This document shows, in pieces, positions 4,729 through 44,393 of a DNA stretch of 64,000 bases. Positions within the stretch are counted from its first letter, which is position 1. Every line of letters begins with the position of its first letter. This DNA is from Auanema rhodensis (lineage: Eukaryota; Animalia; Nematoda), in the NCBI GenBank assembly GCA_964057225.1, contig OZ059898.1, positions 8,370,001 through 8,434,000 on the forward strand, read 5' to 3'. Made by a program: the position numbers and the translations under genes. The notes under the pieces were generated by a model that worked only from the letters and a program-made list of their open reading frames with translations, searched no databases and was not told where the DNA came from.

Positions 4729-4801
4729 GCCCGGTTAGCTCAGTCGGTAGAGCACCAGACTCTTAATCTGGCTGTCGCGGGTTCGAGCCCCGCATCGGGC
4801 T
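4729..4801 (+). tRNA. tRNA-Lys (anticodon CTT)
   Basis: GCCCGGTTAGCTCAGTCGGTAGAGCACCAGACTCTTAATCTGGCTGTCGCGGGTTCGAGCCCCGCATCGGGCT. A-box, B-box (GGTTCGAGCCC), anticodon stem CCAGA/TCTGG around CTCTTAA, acceptor stem pairs, T-runs downstream as Pol III terminator. Near-identical to C. elegans tRNA-Lys(CTT) as I recall it. Confidence 0.97.
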
Positions 4802-37550: not shown

Positions 37551-39357
37551 CTAATGGTGATGGTGGACATAATCAGGGTCATATGAGTCCGAGTCAAAGT
37601 CTTGAGAGGTTTCCAATGAGGTAAGATCATCATAATAGGCCTCCTTGTAGTAGTATTCATACCTATAACAATGAAGTTTGCAATTACATAGAAAGCTTTT
37701 AAGAATATATACCAAGGCTCAGGCAAATGATGTCCTGTACGCCAGATATCTAATCCAGCTTGTTCATCCCCATTCTTAGCGATGTATCCGTAACCATAGG
37801 GAGACTTCAACACCTAAAATTATAGCTTATGGTTTATATAATTATCTAGAGTGATGGTGATACCTCTTTCCTCATAACATGAAGGAAATGACCAGTGTCT
37901 CTAGGGTTAGTGTACAGCTCCCCAACTTCATGGGTCAAAATACCATCAAAGGCAAGCATACGAGCATCGAACTTGTTCGTCACGCTGTATGTATCAAGAT
38001 ACTTTTCATATGAAAAATTTACTAATACTGTTGTCTCCATCCGGCCCATCCGACTTCATCAACCAGTGTGTTCCACTCAGCCATAACATCACCACTATGC
38101 CATTCAAAGAAGTCAAGGTCCAAACGCTCAATATCTTCGACAACAGTATCAGCATCACCAGGCTTTGTCCAGTCATAAGCTAAAATTTTGGAGTGAGCCC
38201 TGAAAAGATTAAATACAGCTTCCCAATAATTGAGCTTATTTACTTGAACTCTTTCAAAGAATCCTTGAAAGATTCCTCCATAACTTTAAGATATTGTTCA
38301 TCGATAACTTCCATTTCGTCAACCTATCATATAATATTTTTATTTTAATCAATGATGAGAATCATTATCTCACAATTCCTCTCTTTCTGATATTTTCAAG
38401 ACATGTCTTGACTGGAGCGTCAAGGTAGATAACAAGGTGAGGCCAGAAGTGCAACTGTGGAAGAGCATTCTTGCGAACATAATAGTAATGTTTAAAGTCT
38501 GTAATTCATGCATTATTATATTTCCATATGACTAGAGAAAAATTTAACATACACTCAAGCCCGATGTAATTCTTTTCCCTCATAGCATTAGCGAAGACGA
38601 AATCAGAAAAAGGTGATCTCTCAAGAACAACACCCTGACCTAAAACAGTTCCAATTAGTAAAATGGTAAAAAAATATTTTCAAGTATTTGAACTATCAGT
38701 AACCTGTATTGAGCAAATGAGCCAGAGCATTCAAATATTGATCAAAACGGCAGCTAAAAATTCTATCTTGCATAGCAGCAGTAAGTTTACCAAATGGGTT
38801 CTTGTAGAACATTTTGATATCAGGAATTCTGTATCTTTCAGGGAACTAAAAAGACATAATAACTCCTTTTCAAAACTTTTAGGAGAACCTTGCTGTAGAA
38901 GTTCCTCAAATCGTTGCCATATCTATCCACAAGAATATCGTCCATTTTGAATTCGGGTATATGATGAAAGCCTAATTGATCAGCTAACTCTTTGGCTAAT
39001 TTGGACTTAAAGATTAAATAAAGCAATTAGATTATGAAAAACTAAAAATTAACCTTTCCAGATCCAACATTACCTTCAACAACAATAAGTTTTGAATTTT
39101 GGTGGAAATGAGGTCGAGTGGGATCTTCCAAGTTGTCAACGTAGTTGAAACCTCGTTCCTTGTATGGCCATGGGGCGGGATAATTCTCGGGCACCCTAGG
39201 AACCTCCCTTAAAAAGGAGCAGAACAAAAAGTATTTACCTCAGCAAGCTTTTATGTACTACAGTTCTATTTTGCTGGACCTGCAACAAAGCGAGAGCAGA
39301 ATTTCTGCTATTGCTCAGAAGCCGATGAGCAGCTCCCCCCAGCTTACTCACTGACAT
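37551..39357 (-). CDS. nuo-4: NADH:ubiquinone oxidoreductase subunit NDUFA10 (deoxynucleoside-kinase fold), multi-exon
   Basis: Basic mitochondrial presequence MSVSKLGGAAHRLLSNS; YPAPWPYKE; P-loop VVEGNVGSGK; GVVLERSPFSDFVF; C-terminus YDPDYVHHHH*. Confidence 0.93.
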
Positions 39358-39359
39358 AC

Positions 39360-39469
39360 CTATATGATTAATTTTATAAAATATACGTTAAATTTTCAAA
39401 AATATATGTAGACGTGCATACGTCCGATAAAAAAGAAAAGAAAGAAAAACATTATGTTTTTTTTTTATT
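39360..39469 (-). promoter_or_regulatory. Operon intercistronic region: rnp-7 poly(A) signal, U-rich tract, Ur-like element and nuo-4 trans-splice acceptor
   Basis: AATAAA at 39469-39464; U-rich run; stem-loop GGACGT-ATGC-ACGTCT (39425-39410) followed by TATTTT (UAYYUU, 39404-39399); acceptor catatag about 105 nt after the AATAAA and 2 nt before the ATG. Confidence 0.7.
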
Positions 39470-39671
39470 ATAATAATTGTGATGATAATACATGGAACCA
39501 ACAAGATCATAACAACACACTTATGAACAATCGAATGTTATTAAATGAGAAACTTCAACTTGGACCAAGGTGATACCCCATATCAGACGGCGTATCAACA
39601 CCCTTTACAAACTCACCAAGTTGGTAGGGGAGAGACATAACTTACGGAAAATAACATGAGATATAATAAAA

Positions 39672-41346
39672 TTAATAGCGTCTTTCACGTTGATAATCAT
39701 TTCTTCTATATTCTCCCCCCCCTCCTCCTCCTCGATGATCTCCTCCACCGGAACGATATCCATTATTATAACCCCTGTTGCCGCCATAACCACCTCCACC
39801 GCGACGATCATCACGTCGGTCATCACGACGATCATCTCGCCTGTCATCCCTACAAATTTATATTCATTTAAAGCTTTTCAGATAAAAATTACCTTCGTTC
39901 GCGTTCCCTTGATCGACTACGATGTCGTTTGTCTTTTTCACCACGTTCTTTATCTCTCTCAATCCTATCTTTGTCTCTATTATTATTATCACCTCCCGCG
40001 TCTTTTTCTTCCATAGCTTTTCGTGATTCTCTAGCTCTTCTAGTATCGCCTTTGCCGCCACCTACAATAAATCTATAGATCTAGTAACATATCCTAAATT
40101 ACCTAATCGTCTAGGTAGCCAAGACTTCTGTGTGCGACCTCTTTCATAATCAACGACTAGACGCCTACCATCAACTTTAACGCCATCAGCACGTTTATAG
40201 GCATCTAAAAGATAGACTTACAATTACCCTTACAGTGGGAGTGCCAGTTCTTCGTTAGAATACATATATGACTTCCCGCACACAATGATGCTCGGTAATC
40301 TACTCCCTTTACAAACTTTGCGCGCATTCAAAAATCAACTTACGAACATAAACTTACGAAAGCTAAATTCAAAGGGTGGTTCCGCACATCGAGCCAACTT
40401 ACCCGTGTGCTTACCCGAAAATAAACCCAAAAAATGCAAAAAACATTATGGTATACCTATGTCACTACAAGCGACTTCCAAACATACCATCGCATGAGAT
40501 TGAATTGTTCGAGCATTGTTCTGATTCGTACATTTTTTTCATCTTTTACACAAGAAAATCAGAACAAATGCTCATAACAAACCTATTTAACCATATGCAA
40601 TAGAATAGCAAGCCTCAGGCTTTAGGCTGCAATTAAAAACAATGAATCTCAAAATCGCATCTTACGGGGAAACTTACGAGGAAACAAACCTCAACCGCCA
40701 AAAACCCAAAACATTAAATTTCTTTTAAAAAACTTACTGTGCATTTCTGACTTGTCGGAATATTCAATAAAGGAATAACCGCGAGGTTTACCAGTACTAT
40801 CCTGTACCATCACTAACTGCAAAAAGAATGACTTCATAATAAACCTAACTAGGAAGATACCTTTTTTACTTTACCGTAAGTTTCAAACTCACGCCTAAGC
40901 TTACTTTCAGAAGTTTCATAGTTCTATAATTTCAAAGATAAAACAAGAAAAATAGATTTTCCCACAATTCTCGAGATGAACAGGGTTTTATACGGATCCT
41001 CCGTTGCCTTTGGATTATCAGCAGGATTCCATTGTGCAATACCTTGCTCTACTTTATAAGCTAATAGCTCTTCTTTTTCACGACGTTTTCTTTCCCTTTT
41101 TTGTTCCTTCGTTTCGAGAACAACCTTTGGGGGTGTGTCGGCAGGGTTCTAAGTGATAAATGTTAAATATATATAAAAATTAAAACCAACCTCAAACAAA
41201 TGAACATACTCTGCCACTCCGCCATATCGGATCTCAGGAAGTTTTTCGTTTTTCTCAACTAATAGTGGTATAGGAGGAGGAAGATATTGAATTGGAGGCC
41301 TAGCCTCAAATAATAACATCAAATTGGGAGGCAAGAAAGCAGTCAT
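39672..41346 (-). CDS. rnp-7: U1 snRNP 70 kDa protein (U1-70K/SNRNP70), multi-exon
   Basis: [18 protein letters not shown]; [11 protein letters not shown]; [18 protein letters not shown]; [11 protein letters not shown]; EMH|[39 protein letters not shown]; RD/RE/RGG-rich tail ending ERRY*. Confidence 0.96.
40583..40626 (-). other. Putative poison (PTC) cassette exon / alternative 3' splice site inside the long rnp-7 intron
   Basis: gtttttaattgcag|CCTAAAGCC...AAATAG|gtttgt. The upstream exon ends in phase 1 (A), so A+CC TAA gives a stop at the second codon. Confidence 0.6.
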
Positions 41347-41740: not shown

Positions 41741-44393
41741 ATGATGGACGTGAATGATTCATCTCATCATGCAGATGATGCGAATATTGTAGTAGAAGAA
41801 ATGTATGAAGAAGATGTTGATGGAGATATGGGAGTATGCATTGTATGAAAGCAACATTGTAAATTTGAATATTACAGGGACTTCTTCCTAATAATGATTC
41901 CGTACTTCGCTATGAAGACGATGAACGGAATGACGGCGATGAATACGGTGGTATGCCGCTTGAATTGTATAACAGCATAGTAACATTCAAAAGGTATCAA
42001 GAATTTCAATATGCCTAAAAACTGTTCTATTTTCTTTATAGATCTGGTATATACCCACCAACCTTAAACAGTAGGCAAGACAGAAGTGCTGCAAGTCATT
42101 GGAGGTTTTTCTCTTTCTAGAACATTGATATCTTATGTGTATATTAGGTCTCGCTGTATGAGGTTTATTTTGGCAGAAGATAATGAAACACTGTTGTACT
42201 ACAATCCAACTAGTTCTGTTAATGATCAAGCAAAAGTTGTGGTTAAAAAGGGTGAAGTCAGGCGGGTGCTAGAAAGAATCCATGAACTTATCGGGCATTT
42301 GGGACAGAAGAGAACGTGCTGTTTACTAATTGAAATAATAATTGAACCTAATCTTATTTACAGTCAAATGGTTGTATTAAAAAAGCTACATTGGCGTTCT
42401 GTTAGGCAGGATGTGAAAACATTCATCATGAATTGTTCATTTTGTAATCAGAAGAAATTAGAAGGGAAAAAAATTTTGAAAGCTCCAGTTGATATATCCA
42501 GTTTGTTCCTTTTTCCAGAGTATATAACTTTATTTAATTAAGGTGAACATTTTGGCCTGAATATTGAAGTTCGCAATAAAGCGCCAGGAGATGGTAGTGG
42601 ACAAGATAGATTATCCTTTAGTTTGATAGGGTTACTTGATATCTGTTAACAACATAATATATATTCTGATTCAGATACAATGAGCATGAAGTTCAAGCTG
42701 CTGCAATGAGTCGTATGACAACCTATACTTTCAAAGAAACTGCTCCAGACCTCAGAGGAGCCCGTTATAATCGGCTTCCCAAATCGGAATACGCTTATGT
42801 ACATATATTTTTGAAAAGACATTATGTGAAATTTAAACTTATAGGGCTCTCCTGCATTTCGAAGACAGCCATATATTAAACGCTCACGGTGTGGTAGCTA
42901 CCCCACTAGTTACATATTGCCTTATGCTCCTAAAGGAAATCGAGATGTAATTTTTGTTATAAAACAATTTTTAATGCTTTAATTTAGGAGACAGAGTTCA
43001 TCGTTTTCTCAGACCCAAGAAACTCGTCAGGCGGATATCCAGGAGAAGAAGAGGTGTTCGGGAAATATGAAACTGAGAAATATGAAGAGTTGGTTAACGT
43101 TCACAGTTTCAATGTTAGTATTCTTATTTAAGATTGGTTGATCCTCGCCCAAGTACATCTGGAGATGTCGGTCGCATAGCTGTTGAGCACGATGTTAATG
43201 CTGGGCATTCTAGTGCCTCCCCGCCTGTAGTTAATCGTCCTGGAAGCGTTAGTCACATGAAATGGAATATCTATAATTAGAGTATTTTTTGTTTTAGATC
43301 AAATCTGAACAACCGATGATTCCTAGTATGCCTGTCTATTATGATCCACCAAAGCGAAGTACGTTTAAATTATCCATAAAATCATTCAATAGTTATTCAT
43401 TTTAGCATCTAATGTTGGTAGATTATCATCATCCGGTTTAATATCGCATACGAATAGAAGAAGAAGAAATAAGTTTAATCATGGCCCTACAGGAACCGCT
43501 GCTCGATTTAGTTTAGCTGTTGGAGATGGTGAAAGGCTTGGTAATTTTTAAGATATCCGTTTTTTGTTCATATTTTCAAAATTTCAGATCTCTCTGATCA
43601 TACTGCTGAACTGCTGACACCTTTAGAAGCTGCTCAAAATAGACCTGAATTAATAGGCTTGGCTCCAATCATGTTAATGCCATCAGTTGATCTAGAAGTT
43701 ATACATTTACAGAAAGAGGTTGTTTAAATATATGACTGCCTTTTCTATGTATCTTATTGTAGTTGTTAACAAGACAGTTAAGCATACAAGCGTTACAAGA
43801 GAAAATACTTCATTCGCAGTACGAGTCGATGAGGATTCCAATTGCCAGGTTTTTTTTTATTTTGTTCCCTTATCATTGATGAAATGTCCTTCACTTAATA
43901 TGATTTAATCAAAACTAGATATAATTGTATTTTCACCTTTGATCAGTTAAGATTCAGGTACGAAGAAATTGATCCCCGCGGTGATAGAATACAGCTTCTC
44001 TCTCATGTTGGCCAAAACGTTATTGAGGTCTGTTCATGTTTTTGATTTTTCAAATTATATGACGTAATTGAATTAATGTGTAATGTTTTTTATGACAACT
44101 CAAGGTGAGTCTTTTAATGCAACTTTGTTAAATAAGTAACAAACTTGTAAATATTGTGTGCAGAAAAGTTACTTGGATCTATATATATGTTAACATATAA
44201 TATATATATATATATAGCATCCCATCTCCTGTAACTGAACAGAGTTACAGGGACCACCCATGTGCTCTAATTATATCTATGTAATCTTAAATTGCAGGAA
44301 ACCGTCGAAATTGATCAAGATCTCAACGTTATTGATAGCGATAACGAGCACGATGAAACTATCGATGTGATGAAACGCTTTAATCAAGAATAA
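41741..44393 (+). CDS. Integrase zinc-binding (H2C2) domain protein, K04G7.1-like, multi-exon
   Basis: MMDVNDSSHHADD...; IHELIGHLGQKRT-QMVVLKKLHWRSVRQDVKTFIMNCSFCNQKK is a Gypsy-type HHCC motif; no DDE core or RT; many canonical short introns; acidic C-terminus ending KRFNQE*. Confidence 0.75.

What the first reader, a model, noticed from the sequence alone, without database searches (positions are those of the whole stretch)
39611..39645. Two strong 5' splice sites in the U1-70K 3'UTR, upstream of the nuo-4 trans-splice acceptor
Seen: CC|GTAAGT (39645-39640) and TG|GTGAGT (39616-39611) lie within about 60 nt after the rnp-7 stop, about 140-175 nt before its AATAAA and about 250-285 nt before the nuo-4 acceptor. 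Known: U1 bound in a terminal exon inhibits polyadenylation via U1-70K, and an upstream donor converts a nematode trans-splice site to cis-splicing. Inference: high U1 could suppress rnp-7 3'-end formation or cis-splice rnp-7 onto nuo-4 (an NMD-prone dicistronic RNA), coupling U1 level to a complex I subunit.
Basis: partly seen in the sequence, partly recalled or inferred. Interest (0 to 1): 0.7.

Follow-up and report, generated by a model that had tools for sequence, protein, structure and literature searches.

The report
U1-binding sites in U1-70K 3'UTR
A roundworm's gene for the splicing protein U1-70K keeps two strong, unused "intron-start" signals in its mRNA tail; they are probably extra landing pads for the U1 particle that help the gene limit its own output, but related worms lack them and RNA assemblies show no splicing onto the neighbouring gene.

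Summary
Both motifs are at the stated coordinates on the minus strand. cc|GTAAGTT (39645) lies 27 nt after the rnp-7 stop and tg|GTGAGTTT (39616) lies 56 nt after it. They are about 150-175 nt before AATAAA and 256-285 nt before the nuo-4 acceptor.

The pair is unlikely by chance (P about 0.001-0.007). It is the same GTAAGTT type as the decoy cluster in intron 4 of the same gene. Nine of the 24 sense-strand GTRAGT in the 64 kb lie in rnp-7.

Spliced RNA contigs from four runs cover the 3'UTR without a break. No contig covers the intercistronic gap. One nuo-4 contig carries a spliced-leader tail. So assemblies show neither a 3'UTR intron nor cis-splicing onto nuo-4.

The intronic cluster is enriched in five of seven orthologues. 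The 3'UTR sites are absent from all five rhabditid orthologues that could be assessed.

My reading is that these are unspliced U1 snRNP binding sites in the terminal exon. They are specific to this lineage and possibly a small copy of the intronic sensor. They would most likely add U1-dependent damping of rnp-7 3'-end formation or export (confidence 0.4). Chance or a neutral origin is about equally likely. The sister finding s1-384005 covers the intron.

The parts
39639..39645 (-). Site 1: GTAAGTT, preceded by TCC. It has 7 contiguous bases complementary to the nematode-type U1 5' end and lies 27 nt after the stop.
   Evidence: Sequence read. Complementarity run. Stays unspliced in the RNA contigs.
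39609..39617 (-). Site 2: G|GTGAGTTT. It has 9 contiguous pairs to U1, one of them a G.U at +3, and lies 56 nt after the stop.
   Evidence: Unspliced in the contigs. The G at +1 and the exon side are paired in the predicted stem.
39672..39674 (-). rnp-7 stop codon TAA
   Evidence: The reading frame follows from the joints.
39460..39848 (-). rnp-7 terminal exon: last 59 codons plus a 3'UTR of about 212 nt.
   Evidence: Contigs of all four runs run unbroken from 39460/39473/39479 to 39848, then join to 39892.
39464..39469 (-). AATAAA followed by an A-run. The RNA contigs end here.
39558..39623 (-). Predicted hairpin. The outer 8-bp stem is CAACUUGG/CCAAGUUG and there is an inner stem-loop. Bases +2 to +8 of site 2 lie in an internal loop.
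   Evidence: z = -1.7; 12 of 200 shuffles fold as well. Marginal.
39594..39654 (-). Stretch sharing two colinear blocks with intron 4 (40298-40366). It may be a copy of the intronic decoy module.
   Evidence: 18/20 block; 0.95% of shuffles reach the score. (TGTAAAGGG occurs only at 40313 and 39609 in the window).
39362..39459 (-). Intercistronic region with a U-rich tract. No RNA contig covers it.
   Evidence: Depth arithmetic. Sequence.
39360..39361 (-). nuo-4 trans-splice acceptor AG. The exon starts at 39359 and the ATG is at 39357.
   Evidence: Loose end at 39361 in run X3, whose reverse complement reads TCCAGGTTTG(AG), a spliced-leader tail. Acceptor score 8.9.
40205..40737 (-). Context: rnp-7 intron 4, 533 nt (14 of the 15 listed introns of the two genes are 42-64 nt). 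It holds six GTAAGT, a probable poison acceptor at 40627|40626, and is partly retained in RNA.
   Evidence: This is the subject of sister finding s1-384005.

Best explanation
The two motifs are U1 snRNP binding sites, not used splice donors. They stay in the mature rnp-7 mRNA, in its terminal exon.

They belong to the same GTAAGTT class as the decoy 5' splice sites in intron 4 of this gene. That intronic cluster is the nematode counterpart of the vertebrate U1-70K exon-7a / 5' splice-site-cluster sensor. The 3'UTR pair may have arisen as a small copy of that intronic module.

Inferred mechanism: when intact U1 snRNP is plentiful it pairs with these sites. Through U1-70K it then lowers polyadenylation at the AATAAA 150-175 nt downstream, or holds the mRNA in the nucleus. 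This would add a second, lineage-specific negative feedback on U1-70K output.

Shown: the sites, their enrichment, their complementarity, their position in the terminal exon, and the absence of splicing in assemblies.

Inferred: U1 occupancy and any effect on 3'-end formation or export.
For: - Enrichment: two sites in 212 nt, P = 0.003 (GTRAGT) or 7e-4 (GTRAGTT).
- Nine of 24 sense-strand GTRAGT and all four CGTAAGT of the 64 kb lie in rnp-7. Only one lies on its antisense strand.
- Only 1 of 15 real donors in rnp-7 and nuo-4 is GTAAGT, so the motif is not the ordinary donor of this species.
- Complementarity to U1 runs 7 and 9 bases, including T at +7/+8 as in the intronic decoys here and in C. 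briggsae.
- RNA contigs of four runs cover 39460-39848 unbroken, so the sites are in the terminal exon and are kept.
- There is no usable internal 3' splice site in the UTR (scores -1.9 to 1.2 against 4.5-11.9).
- The gene clearly senses U1. The intronic cluster is significantly enriched in 5 of 7 orthologues (P from 3e-3 to 3e-11), and intron 4 is retained at roughly a fifth to a third of the spliced level, more in run X4.
- The UTR stretch shares two colinear blocks with the intronic module.
- Known biology: U1 sites in a terminal exon inhibit polyadenylation, two sites act synergistically, and they work up to 1190 nt upstream of the signal (PMC2367729). 5' splice-site motifs in terminal exons cause U1-70K-dependent nuclear retention (PMC9074902, PMC4380460).
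Against: - There is no site with 6 or more contiguous U1-complementary bases in the 3' regions of C. briggsae, C. auriculariae, D. pachys, Cylicocyclus or P. fissidentatus.
- The mRNA 3' end is assembled at depths similar to the upstream exons, so any repression is partial.
- Site 1 has only 7 pairs. Site 2 is partly in a predicted stem. The cited U1i work asks for 8-10 accessible bases.
- My searches found no paper showing U1-dependent poly(A) suppression in nematodes.
- The statistical support is post hoc, and the homology to the intron module is only nominal (about 1%).
Confidence: 0.4

Rival explanations
1. Chance or neutral by-product. The two hexamers arose by drift in an AT-rich UTR, or by a small neutral duplication or gene conversion from intron 4. 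They have no selected regulatory effect.
For: - There is no conservation in five assessable rhabditid orthologues. One GTRAGT in about 2.1 kb of orthologous 3' regions is what chance predicts.
- The mRNA is abundant with the sites in place.
- The fold z-scores are unremarkable.
- The colinear similarity to intron 4 offers a neutral origin.
Against: - The pair falls in the one gene of the window where U1 sites are expected to matter.
- It is of the rare GTAAGTT type that real donors here seldom use (1 of 15).
- All close GTRAGT pairs on this strand lie in rnp-7.
- If the vertebrate mechanism holds in nematodes, such sites would be costly unless they were useful.
Confidence: 0.4
2. U1 bound in the 3'UTR acts on the operon rather than on rnp-7. 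[quoted passage not shown]
For: - In C. elegans, rnp-7 RNAi lowers polycistronic pre-mRNA, downstream-gene mRNA and Pol II density 1-1.5 kb past an internal poly(A) site (PMC2777434).
- The rnp-7 then nuo-4 order, with a short gap, is kept in C. briggsae, C. auriculariae and Cylicocyclus.
- U11 and U1 sites in the RNPC3 3'UTR are linked to read-through into the next gene (PMC5473595).
Against: - The same operon exists without 3'UTR sites in the other species.
- No read-through contig covers 39362-39459.
- nuo-4 contigs are 2-7 times deeper than rnp-7 contigs, which needs no special help, although contig depth is a poor measure.
Confidence: 0.1
3. The sites are real donors that, when U1 is high, cis-splice the rnp-7 transcript onto the nuo-4 trans-splice acceptor, giving an unstable dicistronic RNA.
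For: - The nuo-4 acceptor is the only good 3' splice site downstream (score 8.9), and the implied introns of 257 or 286 nt are feasible.
- From established C. elegans work (own knowledge, Conrad et al. 1993), an upstream donor converts a trans-splice acceptor to cis-splicing.
- An NMD-prone product could be missing from assemblies.
Against: - No such joint is among the 15 listed joints.
- The two unlisted joints are best accounted for by the canonical 40059/40104 intron and by exon 4 joined to 40626.
- The X3 contig at the acceptor carries a spliced-leader tail.
- All runs show the UTR unbroken up to the poly(A) region.
- The sites are not conserved.
Confidence: 0.06
4. The sites are donors of a small 3'UTR intron that ends inside the UTR. 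That would create an exon junction after the stop and mark a minor isoform for decay.
For: GTAAGT at 39645 to the AG ending at 39603 would give 43 nt, and GTGAGT at 39616 to the AG ending at 39553 would give 64 nt. Both are typical intron lengths here. The 8-bp stem brings 39616 and 39553 together.
Against: All candidate acceptors score -1.9 to 1.2, against 4.5-11.9 for real ones. No such joint is listed and all four runs are continuous.
Confidence: 0.04

Closest known systems
[quoted passage not shown] 2007, as cited in PMC2367729), and U1-mediated poly(A) inhibition in general (papillomavirus late 3'UTR; U1i)
   Same: A gene for a U1 snRNP-specific protein carries 5' splice-site-like U1 binding sequence in its terminal exon, upstream of its poly(A) signal. 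The site is not spliced. Flanking structure may limit access. Two sites would be expected to act together.
   Different: Here the gene is U1-70K, not U1A, and there is no PIE-like protein-binding element. Complementarity is 7 and 9 bases rather than a 10-base consensus. The sites are not conserved in other genera. No functional data exist, and the mechanism is unproven in nematodes.
USSE in the 3'UTR of U11/U12-65K (RNPC3) and in U11-48K (PMC5473595)
   Same: A tandem pair of unused 5' splice sites lies in the mRNA tail of an snRNP-specific protein gene and senses the level of its own snRNP. In RNPC3 this is linked to nuclear retention, poly(A)-site bypass and transcripts joined to the next gene.
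   Different: The USSE consists of U12-type sites bound by U11, is deeply conserved, and works by activating an upstream 3' splice site. No such upstream alternative acceptor or long-UTR isoform is seen here.
[quoted passage not shown]
   Same: Same gene family and same sensing principle (U1 snRNPs on unused 5' splice sites). The nematode intron 4 cluster looks like its counterpart, and the 3'UTR pair uses the same motif type.
   Different: The vertebrate element is intronic and acts through a poison exon and NMD. The pair studied here is after the stop codon in the terminal exon.
5' splice-site motif as a nuclear retention and decay signal in terminal exons (PMC4380460, PMC9074902)
   Same: An unspliced 5' splice-site motif in a 3' terminal exon. 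The effect depends on U1-70K, which would make it self-limiting in this gene.
   Different: It was shown in human cells with ZFC3H1/PAXT. It is not known whether the pathway exists in nematodes.

Membership tests
Terminal-exon U1-binding site (U1i-type poly(A) inhibitor) | 8-10 contiguous bases complementary to the U1 snRNA 5' end | tested here: inconclusive
   Site 2 has 9 pairs including one G.U. Site 1 has 7. The U1 5' end used (AAACUUACCUG) is from my own knowledge of C. elegans. The U1 gene of this genome was not seen.
Terminal-exon U1-binding site (U1i-type poly(A) inhibitor) | [quoted passage not shown] | tested here: met
   Contigs of four runs are unbroken from 39848 to 39460-39479. 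No listed joint starts in the UTR.
Terminal-exon U1-binding site (U1i-type poly(A) inhibitor) | Site accessible (not buried in structure) | tested here: inconclusive
   Site 1 is mostly unpaired. For site 2, +1 and the exon side are in an 8-bp stem and +2 to +8 in an internal loop. The structure is only marginally better than shuffles.
Terminal-exon U1-binding site (U1i-type poly(A) inhibitor) | U1-70K-dependent repression of polyadenylation or mRNA level | not testable with these tools
   This needs mutation of the sites or U1 blocking. Contig depth cannot rank expression.
Terminal-exon U1-binding site (U1i-type poly(A) inhibitor) | Conservation of the site in orthologous terminal exons | tested here: not met
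   No site in the 3' regions of five rhabditid orthologues. There is one GTAAGT after a doubtful stop in B. xylophilus.
Functional 5' splice site (3'UTR intron, or cis-splice onto nuo-4) | Exon-exon junction starting at 39646 or 39617 in RNA | tested here: not met
   None among the 15 listed joints of four runs. The two unlisted joints are probably 40059/40104 and 40626/40738. This is contig-level only, so rare forms could be missed.
Functional 5' splice site (3'UTR intron, or cis-splice onto nuo-4) | A matching 3' splice site downstream | tested here: met
   Only the nuo-4 trans-splice acceptor qualifies (score 8.9). UTR-internal AGs score 1.2 or less.
USSE-like tandem 5' splice-site enhancer | Two unused 5' splice sites in tandem in the 3'UTR of an snRNP protein gene | tested here: met
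   The sites are 29 nt apart and both unspliced.
USSE-like tandem 5' splice-site enhancer | Activates an upstream alternative 3' splice site, giving a second isoform | tested here: not met
   Only one acceptor (39849|39848) is seen for the terminal exon in all runs.
Nematode operon (rnp-7 then nuo-4) | Short intercistronic gap, a U-rich tract, and a downstream gene that is trans-spliced | tested here: met
   About 100 nt lie between the AATAAA/A-run and the acceptor. There is a spliced-leader tail on the X3 contig. The gene order is kept in three other species.

The most novel reading that the evidence does not exclude
U1-70K mRNA of this rhabditid carries in its 3'UTR a miniature copy of its own intronic U1 sensor. 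This would make 3'-end formation at an operon-internal poly(A) site sensitive to U1 level. High U1 would then both cut U1-70K output and change read-through or trans-splicing (or rare cis-splicing) into the complex I gene nuo-4. It would be a first natural case of U1-controlled poly(A) choice inside a nematode operon.
Probability: 0.1. Interest if true: 0.7.

Novelty: new variant of a known kind. Interest (0 to 1): 0.35.

Why it matters
If the sites work, three things follow:
- U1-dependent control of 3'-end formation or mRNA export, known from vertebrates and their viruses, would also operate in nematodes.
- U1-70K would join U1A and U11/U12-65K as snRNP proteins that read their own particle's level through unused splice sites in the mRNA tail.
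- Such an element could arise quickly, by copying a piece of an older intronic sensor.

Because the gene heads an operon, it would also give a simple system for asking how U1 binding near an internal poly(A) site affects the downstream gene.

If the sites do nothing, the finding is an ordinary chance or neutral feature beside a truly conserved intronic sensor.

Tried and rejected
- Conservation in close relatives could not be tested. The nearest relative found (L001, 85% on exon 2) is a 1.5-kb contig that stops before the stop codon. S. vulgaris and a metagenome contig are also too short. The metagenome scan found nothing closer than 61%. Look-ups for the Necator and Nippostrongylus proteins were not on record. 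All 12 contig look-ups are spent.
- Rfam found nothing in or near the UTR. The only gathering-level match in the window is a tRNA, and the E-value-level hits are noise.
- A U1 stem-loop I mimic, which would be a PIE-like protein site for U1-70K, was considered. No convincing match was seen by eye or by Rfam, so it was dropped.
- A lenient gapped alignment of UTR against intron 4 is not significant (49% of shuffles). Only the stringent 20-nt block is.
- Whole-UTR folding gives z = -0.4 and the local hairpin z = -1.7. Neither is evidence of a selected structure.
- Literature searches found no paper on rnp-7 autoregulation or on U1 telescripting in nematodes.
- The two C. briggsae U1-like matches in its terminal-exon coding part (5487, 5640) are weak and were not counted.

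Full report
**What is there**

All features lie on the minus strand. Spliced RNA contigs from four runs of one study define the gene models.
- rnp-7 has seven exons, from the ATG at 41346 to the TAA at 39674-39672.
- Exon 1 matches Pfam U1snRNP70_N.
- The terminal exon runs from 39848 to about 39460. There the contigs end at an AATAAA (39469-39464) that runs into a stretch of A.
- About 100 nt further on, after a U-rich tract, is the acceptor AG (39361-39360) of the next gene.
- One contig (X3) carries ten extra bases at that acceptor. Their reverse complement reads TCCAGGTTTG and runs into the AG. This is the 3' end of a spliced leader close to SL1.
- Exon by exon, the downstream gene matches the dNK-domain (NDUFA10-type, nuo-4) gene that also follows rnp-7 in C. 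briggsae, C. auriculariae and Cylicocyclus.

So the operon reading is sound.

**The observation**

- GTAAGT is at 39645-39640 (context TCC|GTAAGTTA).
- GTGAGT is at 39616-39611 (context TTG|GTGAGTTT).
- These lie 27 and 56 nt after the stop, 176 and 147 nt before AATAAA, and 285 and 256 nt before the nuo-4 acceptor.

**Is the pair more than chance?**

- Background GTRAGT frequency on both strands outside rnp-7 is 4.0e-4 per base.
- The 212-nt UTR should therefore hold 0.084 sites, giving P(>=2) = 0.003.
- With T at +7, P = 7e-4. A mononucleotide shuffle gives 0.007.
- Under 1% of 212-nt windows hold two sites.
- All four pairs of GTRAGT within 60 nt on this strand lie in rnp-7.
- Nine of the 24 sense-strand GTRAGT of the 64 kb lie in the 1.9-kb gene, against one on its antisense strand.
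- All four sense-strand CGTAAGT lie in rnp-7: three in intron 4 and one in the UTR.
- The motif is not this species' usual donor. Of 15 real donors in rnp-7 and nuo-4, only the donor of intron 4 is GTAAGT.

**Complementarity to U1**

I scored the sites against the nematode-type U1 5' end, AAACUUACCUG. That sequence is from my own knowledge of C. elegans. The U1 gene of this genome was not seen.
- Site 2 pairs over 9 contiguous bases, one of them a G.U.
- Site 1 pairs over 7.
- T at +7/+8 is also the rule in the intronic decoys of this gene and of C. briggsae, where most of the sites read GTAAGTTT or GTAAGTTG.

**Context: the gene senses U1**

This is the subject of sister finding s1-384005. 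I checked it independently.
- Intron 4 is 533 nt, while 14 of the 15 introns listed for the two genes are 42-64 nt.
- It holds six GTAAGT (expected 0.12, P about 3e-9).
- It is present unspliced in contigs at roughly a fifth to a third of the spliced depth. In run X4 it is as deep as, or deeper than, the spliced form.
- In X3 and X4 a contig begins exactly at 40626, just after gcag. Splicing of exon 4 to that point would read ACC TAA, an immediate stop. This is probably one of the two joints that one search found but did not list. The other must be the canonical 40059/40104 intron.
- The GTRAGT cluster in the equivalent intron is significant in C. briggsae (7 sites, P 3e-11), P. fissidentatus (8), Cylicocyclus (6), M. 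belari (4) and D. pachys (4).
- It is weak or absent in C. auriculariae and B. xylophilus.
- This matches the vertebrate U1-70K switch, in which an alternative 3' splice site needs a neighbouring cluster of 5' splice sites bound by intact U1 snRNP (PMC3798272).

**Are the two UTR sites used as donors?**

- In all four runs a single contig covers the UTR unbroken from 39460-39479 to 39848.
- Depth arithmetic on the bins shows that no contig in any run covers 39362-39459.
- No listed joint starts at 39646 or 39617.
- Inside the UTR every AG is a poor acceptor (scores -1.9 to 1.2, against 4.5-11.9 for 15 real acceptors).
- The only good acceptor downstream is the nuo-4 one (score 8.9).

Contigs drop rare variants, so a minor, unstable fusion RNA cannot be excluded.

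**Conservation**

I fetched genomic loci for seven orthologues through an exon-2 search and exact-protein look-ups.
- In the 200-400 nt after the stop, C. briggsae, C. auriculariae, D. pachys, Cylicocyclus nassatus and P. fissidentatus have no GTRAGT.
- They also have no site with 6 or more contiguous U1-complementary bases, apart from one 6-base match in Cylicocyclus.
- The M. belari model lacks a stop and cannot be judged.
- B. xylophilus has one GTAAGT 65 nt after an annotated stop that rests on a doubtful 4-codon terminal exon.
- One hit in about 2.1 kb is what chance predicts.

All these species are distant. The closest sequence found is 85% identical on the most conserved exon and ends before the stop. 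The test therefore says the pair is not an old feature. It does not say whether close relatives share it.

**A possible origin**

The UTR stretch 39654-39594 and the intron stretch 40366-40298 share two blocks in the same order.
- The first block is TT(C)CGTAAGTT(T)ATGT.
- The second, 30-40 nt later, is AGTTTGTAAAGGG-GT-GAT, with 18 of 20 bases identical.
- The 20-nt block is reached by 0.95% of shuffles and by a handful of about 240 control pieces of the window.
- A lenient gapped alignment is not significant.
- The 9-mer TGTAAAGGG occurs only twice in the window on either strand, both in the rnp-7 sense strand. It occurs once in the C. briggsae locus, 19 nt before the first intronic decoy.

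This suggests a small copy of the intronic module, or a shared co-factor site. It is not proof of either.

**Structure**

An 8-bp stem (CAACUUGG/CCAAGUUG, 39623-39616 with 39565-39558) encloses an inner hairpin. It pairs the exon side and +1 of site 2 and leaves +2 to +8 in an internal loop. The fold is only marginally better than shuffles (z = -1.7; whole UTR z = -0.4).

**How it most likely works**

U1 snRNP will pair with such sequences wherever they are exposed. In vertebrate systems:
- A U1 site in the terminal exon inhibits polyadenylation through U1-70K.
- Two sites act synergistically.
- The effect holds up to 1190 nt from the signal.
- At least 8 accessible bases are needed (PMC2367729).
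- Unspliced 5' splice-site motifs in terminal exons also cause U1-70K-dependent nuclear retention and decay (PMC4380460, PMC9074902).
- U1A carries a natural U1 site in its own 3'UTR (Guan et al. 2007, as cited there).
- U11/U12-65K carries a tandem pair of unused U12-type 5' splice sites in its 3'UTR, linked to retention, poly(A) bypass and fusion with the next gene (PMC5473595).

By analogy, the two sites here would give rnp-7 a second negative feedback that depends on U1-70K. I put this at 0.4. It fits the enrichment, the motif type, the position and the lack of splicing. It lacks conservation and any functional data. I also found no paper showing the mechanism in nematodes.

**Rival readings**

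- A chance or neutral origin is about equally likely (0.4).
- An operon-level role (anti-termination or read-through, suggested by the C. elegans rnp-7 RNAi result in PMC2777434) gets 0.1.
- Cis-splicing onto nuo-4 gets 0.06.
- A UTR-internal intron gets 0.04.

**Limits and rules followed**

- Spliced protein models were never joined for a search. Exons were searched by reference, and the joined step was left out.
- Read laying and the look-up of sequencing runs allow one call each, so the two unlisted joints could not be read.
- The runs are labelled 'RNA?' by the tool. Canonical GT..AG (CT..AC on the + strand) skips are listed at 15 of the 16 expected introns, and the sixteenth, 40059/40104, is inferred. 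This shows the runs are RNA.

Noticed in passing
window 40205-40737 (minus strand): rnp-7 intron 4 is 533 nt and holds six GTAAGT. Unspliced contigs cover it in all four runs. In X3 and X4 a contig starts exactly at 40626, after gcag. Splicing of exon 4 to that point would read ACC TAA, a poison acceptor. The GTRAGT cluster in the same intron is significant in five of seven orthologues.
   Followed up: partly
window 40216-40233 (minus strand): Three overlapping donor-like hexamers (GTAAGG, GGTAAT, GTAAGT) sit 11-28 nt before the productive acceptor of intron 4.
   Followed up: no
window 42086-42541 (+); L004 1-1599, L005 1-2734, L006, L073 1-1808: An Integrase_H2C2-domain gene lies upstream of rnp-7 on the opposite strand in this window and in C. 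briggsae, C. auriculariae, D. pachys and Cylicocyclus. It is therefore a conserved syntenic host gene (a domesticated integrase?) rather than a live retroelement.
   Followed up: partly
window 39609 and 40313 (minus strand); L004 5006: The 9-mer TGTAAAGGG occurs only twice in the 64 kb, both in the rnp-7 sense strand (3'UTR and intron 4). It occurs once in C. briggsae, just before its intronic decoy cluster. This may be a co-factor site or a trace of duplication.
   Followed up: partly
window 39361 (run X3 loose end): The spliced-leader tail on nuo-4 reads ...TCCAGGTTTGAG. In the ten bases seen it differs at two positions from the canonical SL1 end ...CCCAAGTTTGAG. It is not SL2-like, although the gene is downstream in an operon.
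   Followed up: no
window 40516-40567 (minus-strand intron 4): A perfect 11-bp inverted repeat with a 30-nt loop lies inside intron 4. There is a weak, sub-threshold Rfam mir-50 match at 40509-40574 (21 bits, E = 0.23).
   Followed up: no
window 4729-4801 (+): A tRNA gene, the only Rfam gathering-level match in the window.
   Followed up: no
L074 5591 (B. xylophilus): A single ACA|GTAAGT lies 65 nt after the annotated rnp-7 stop. The annotated model ends in a 4-codon exon after an intron of about 650 nt and may be wrong.
   Followed up: no
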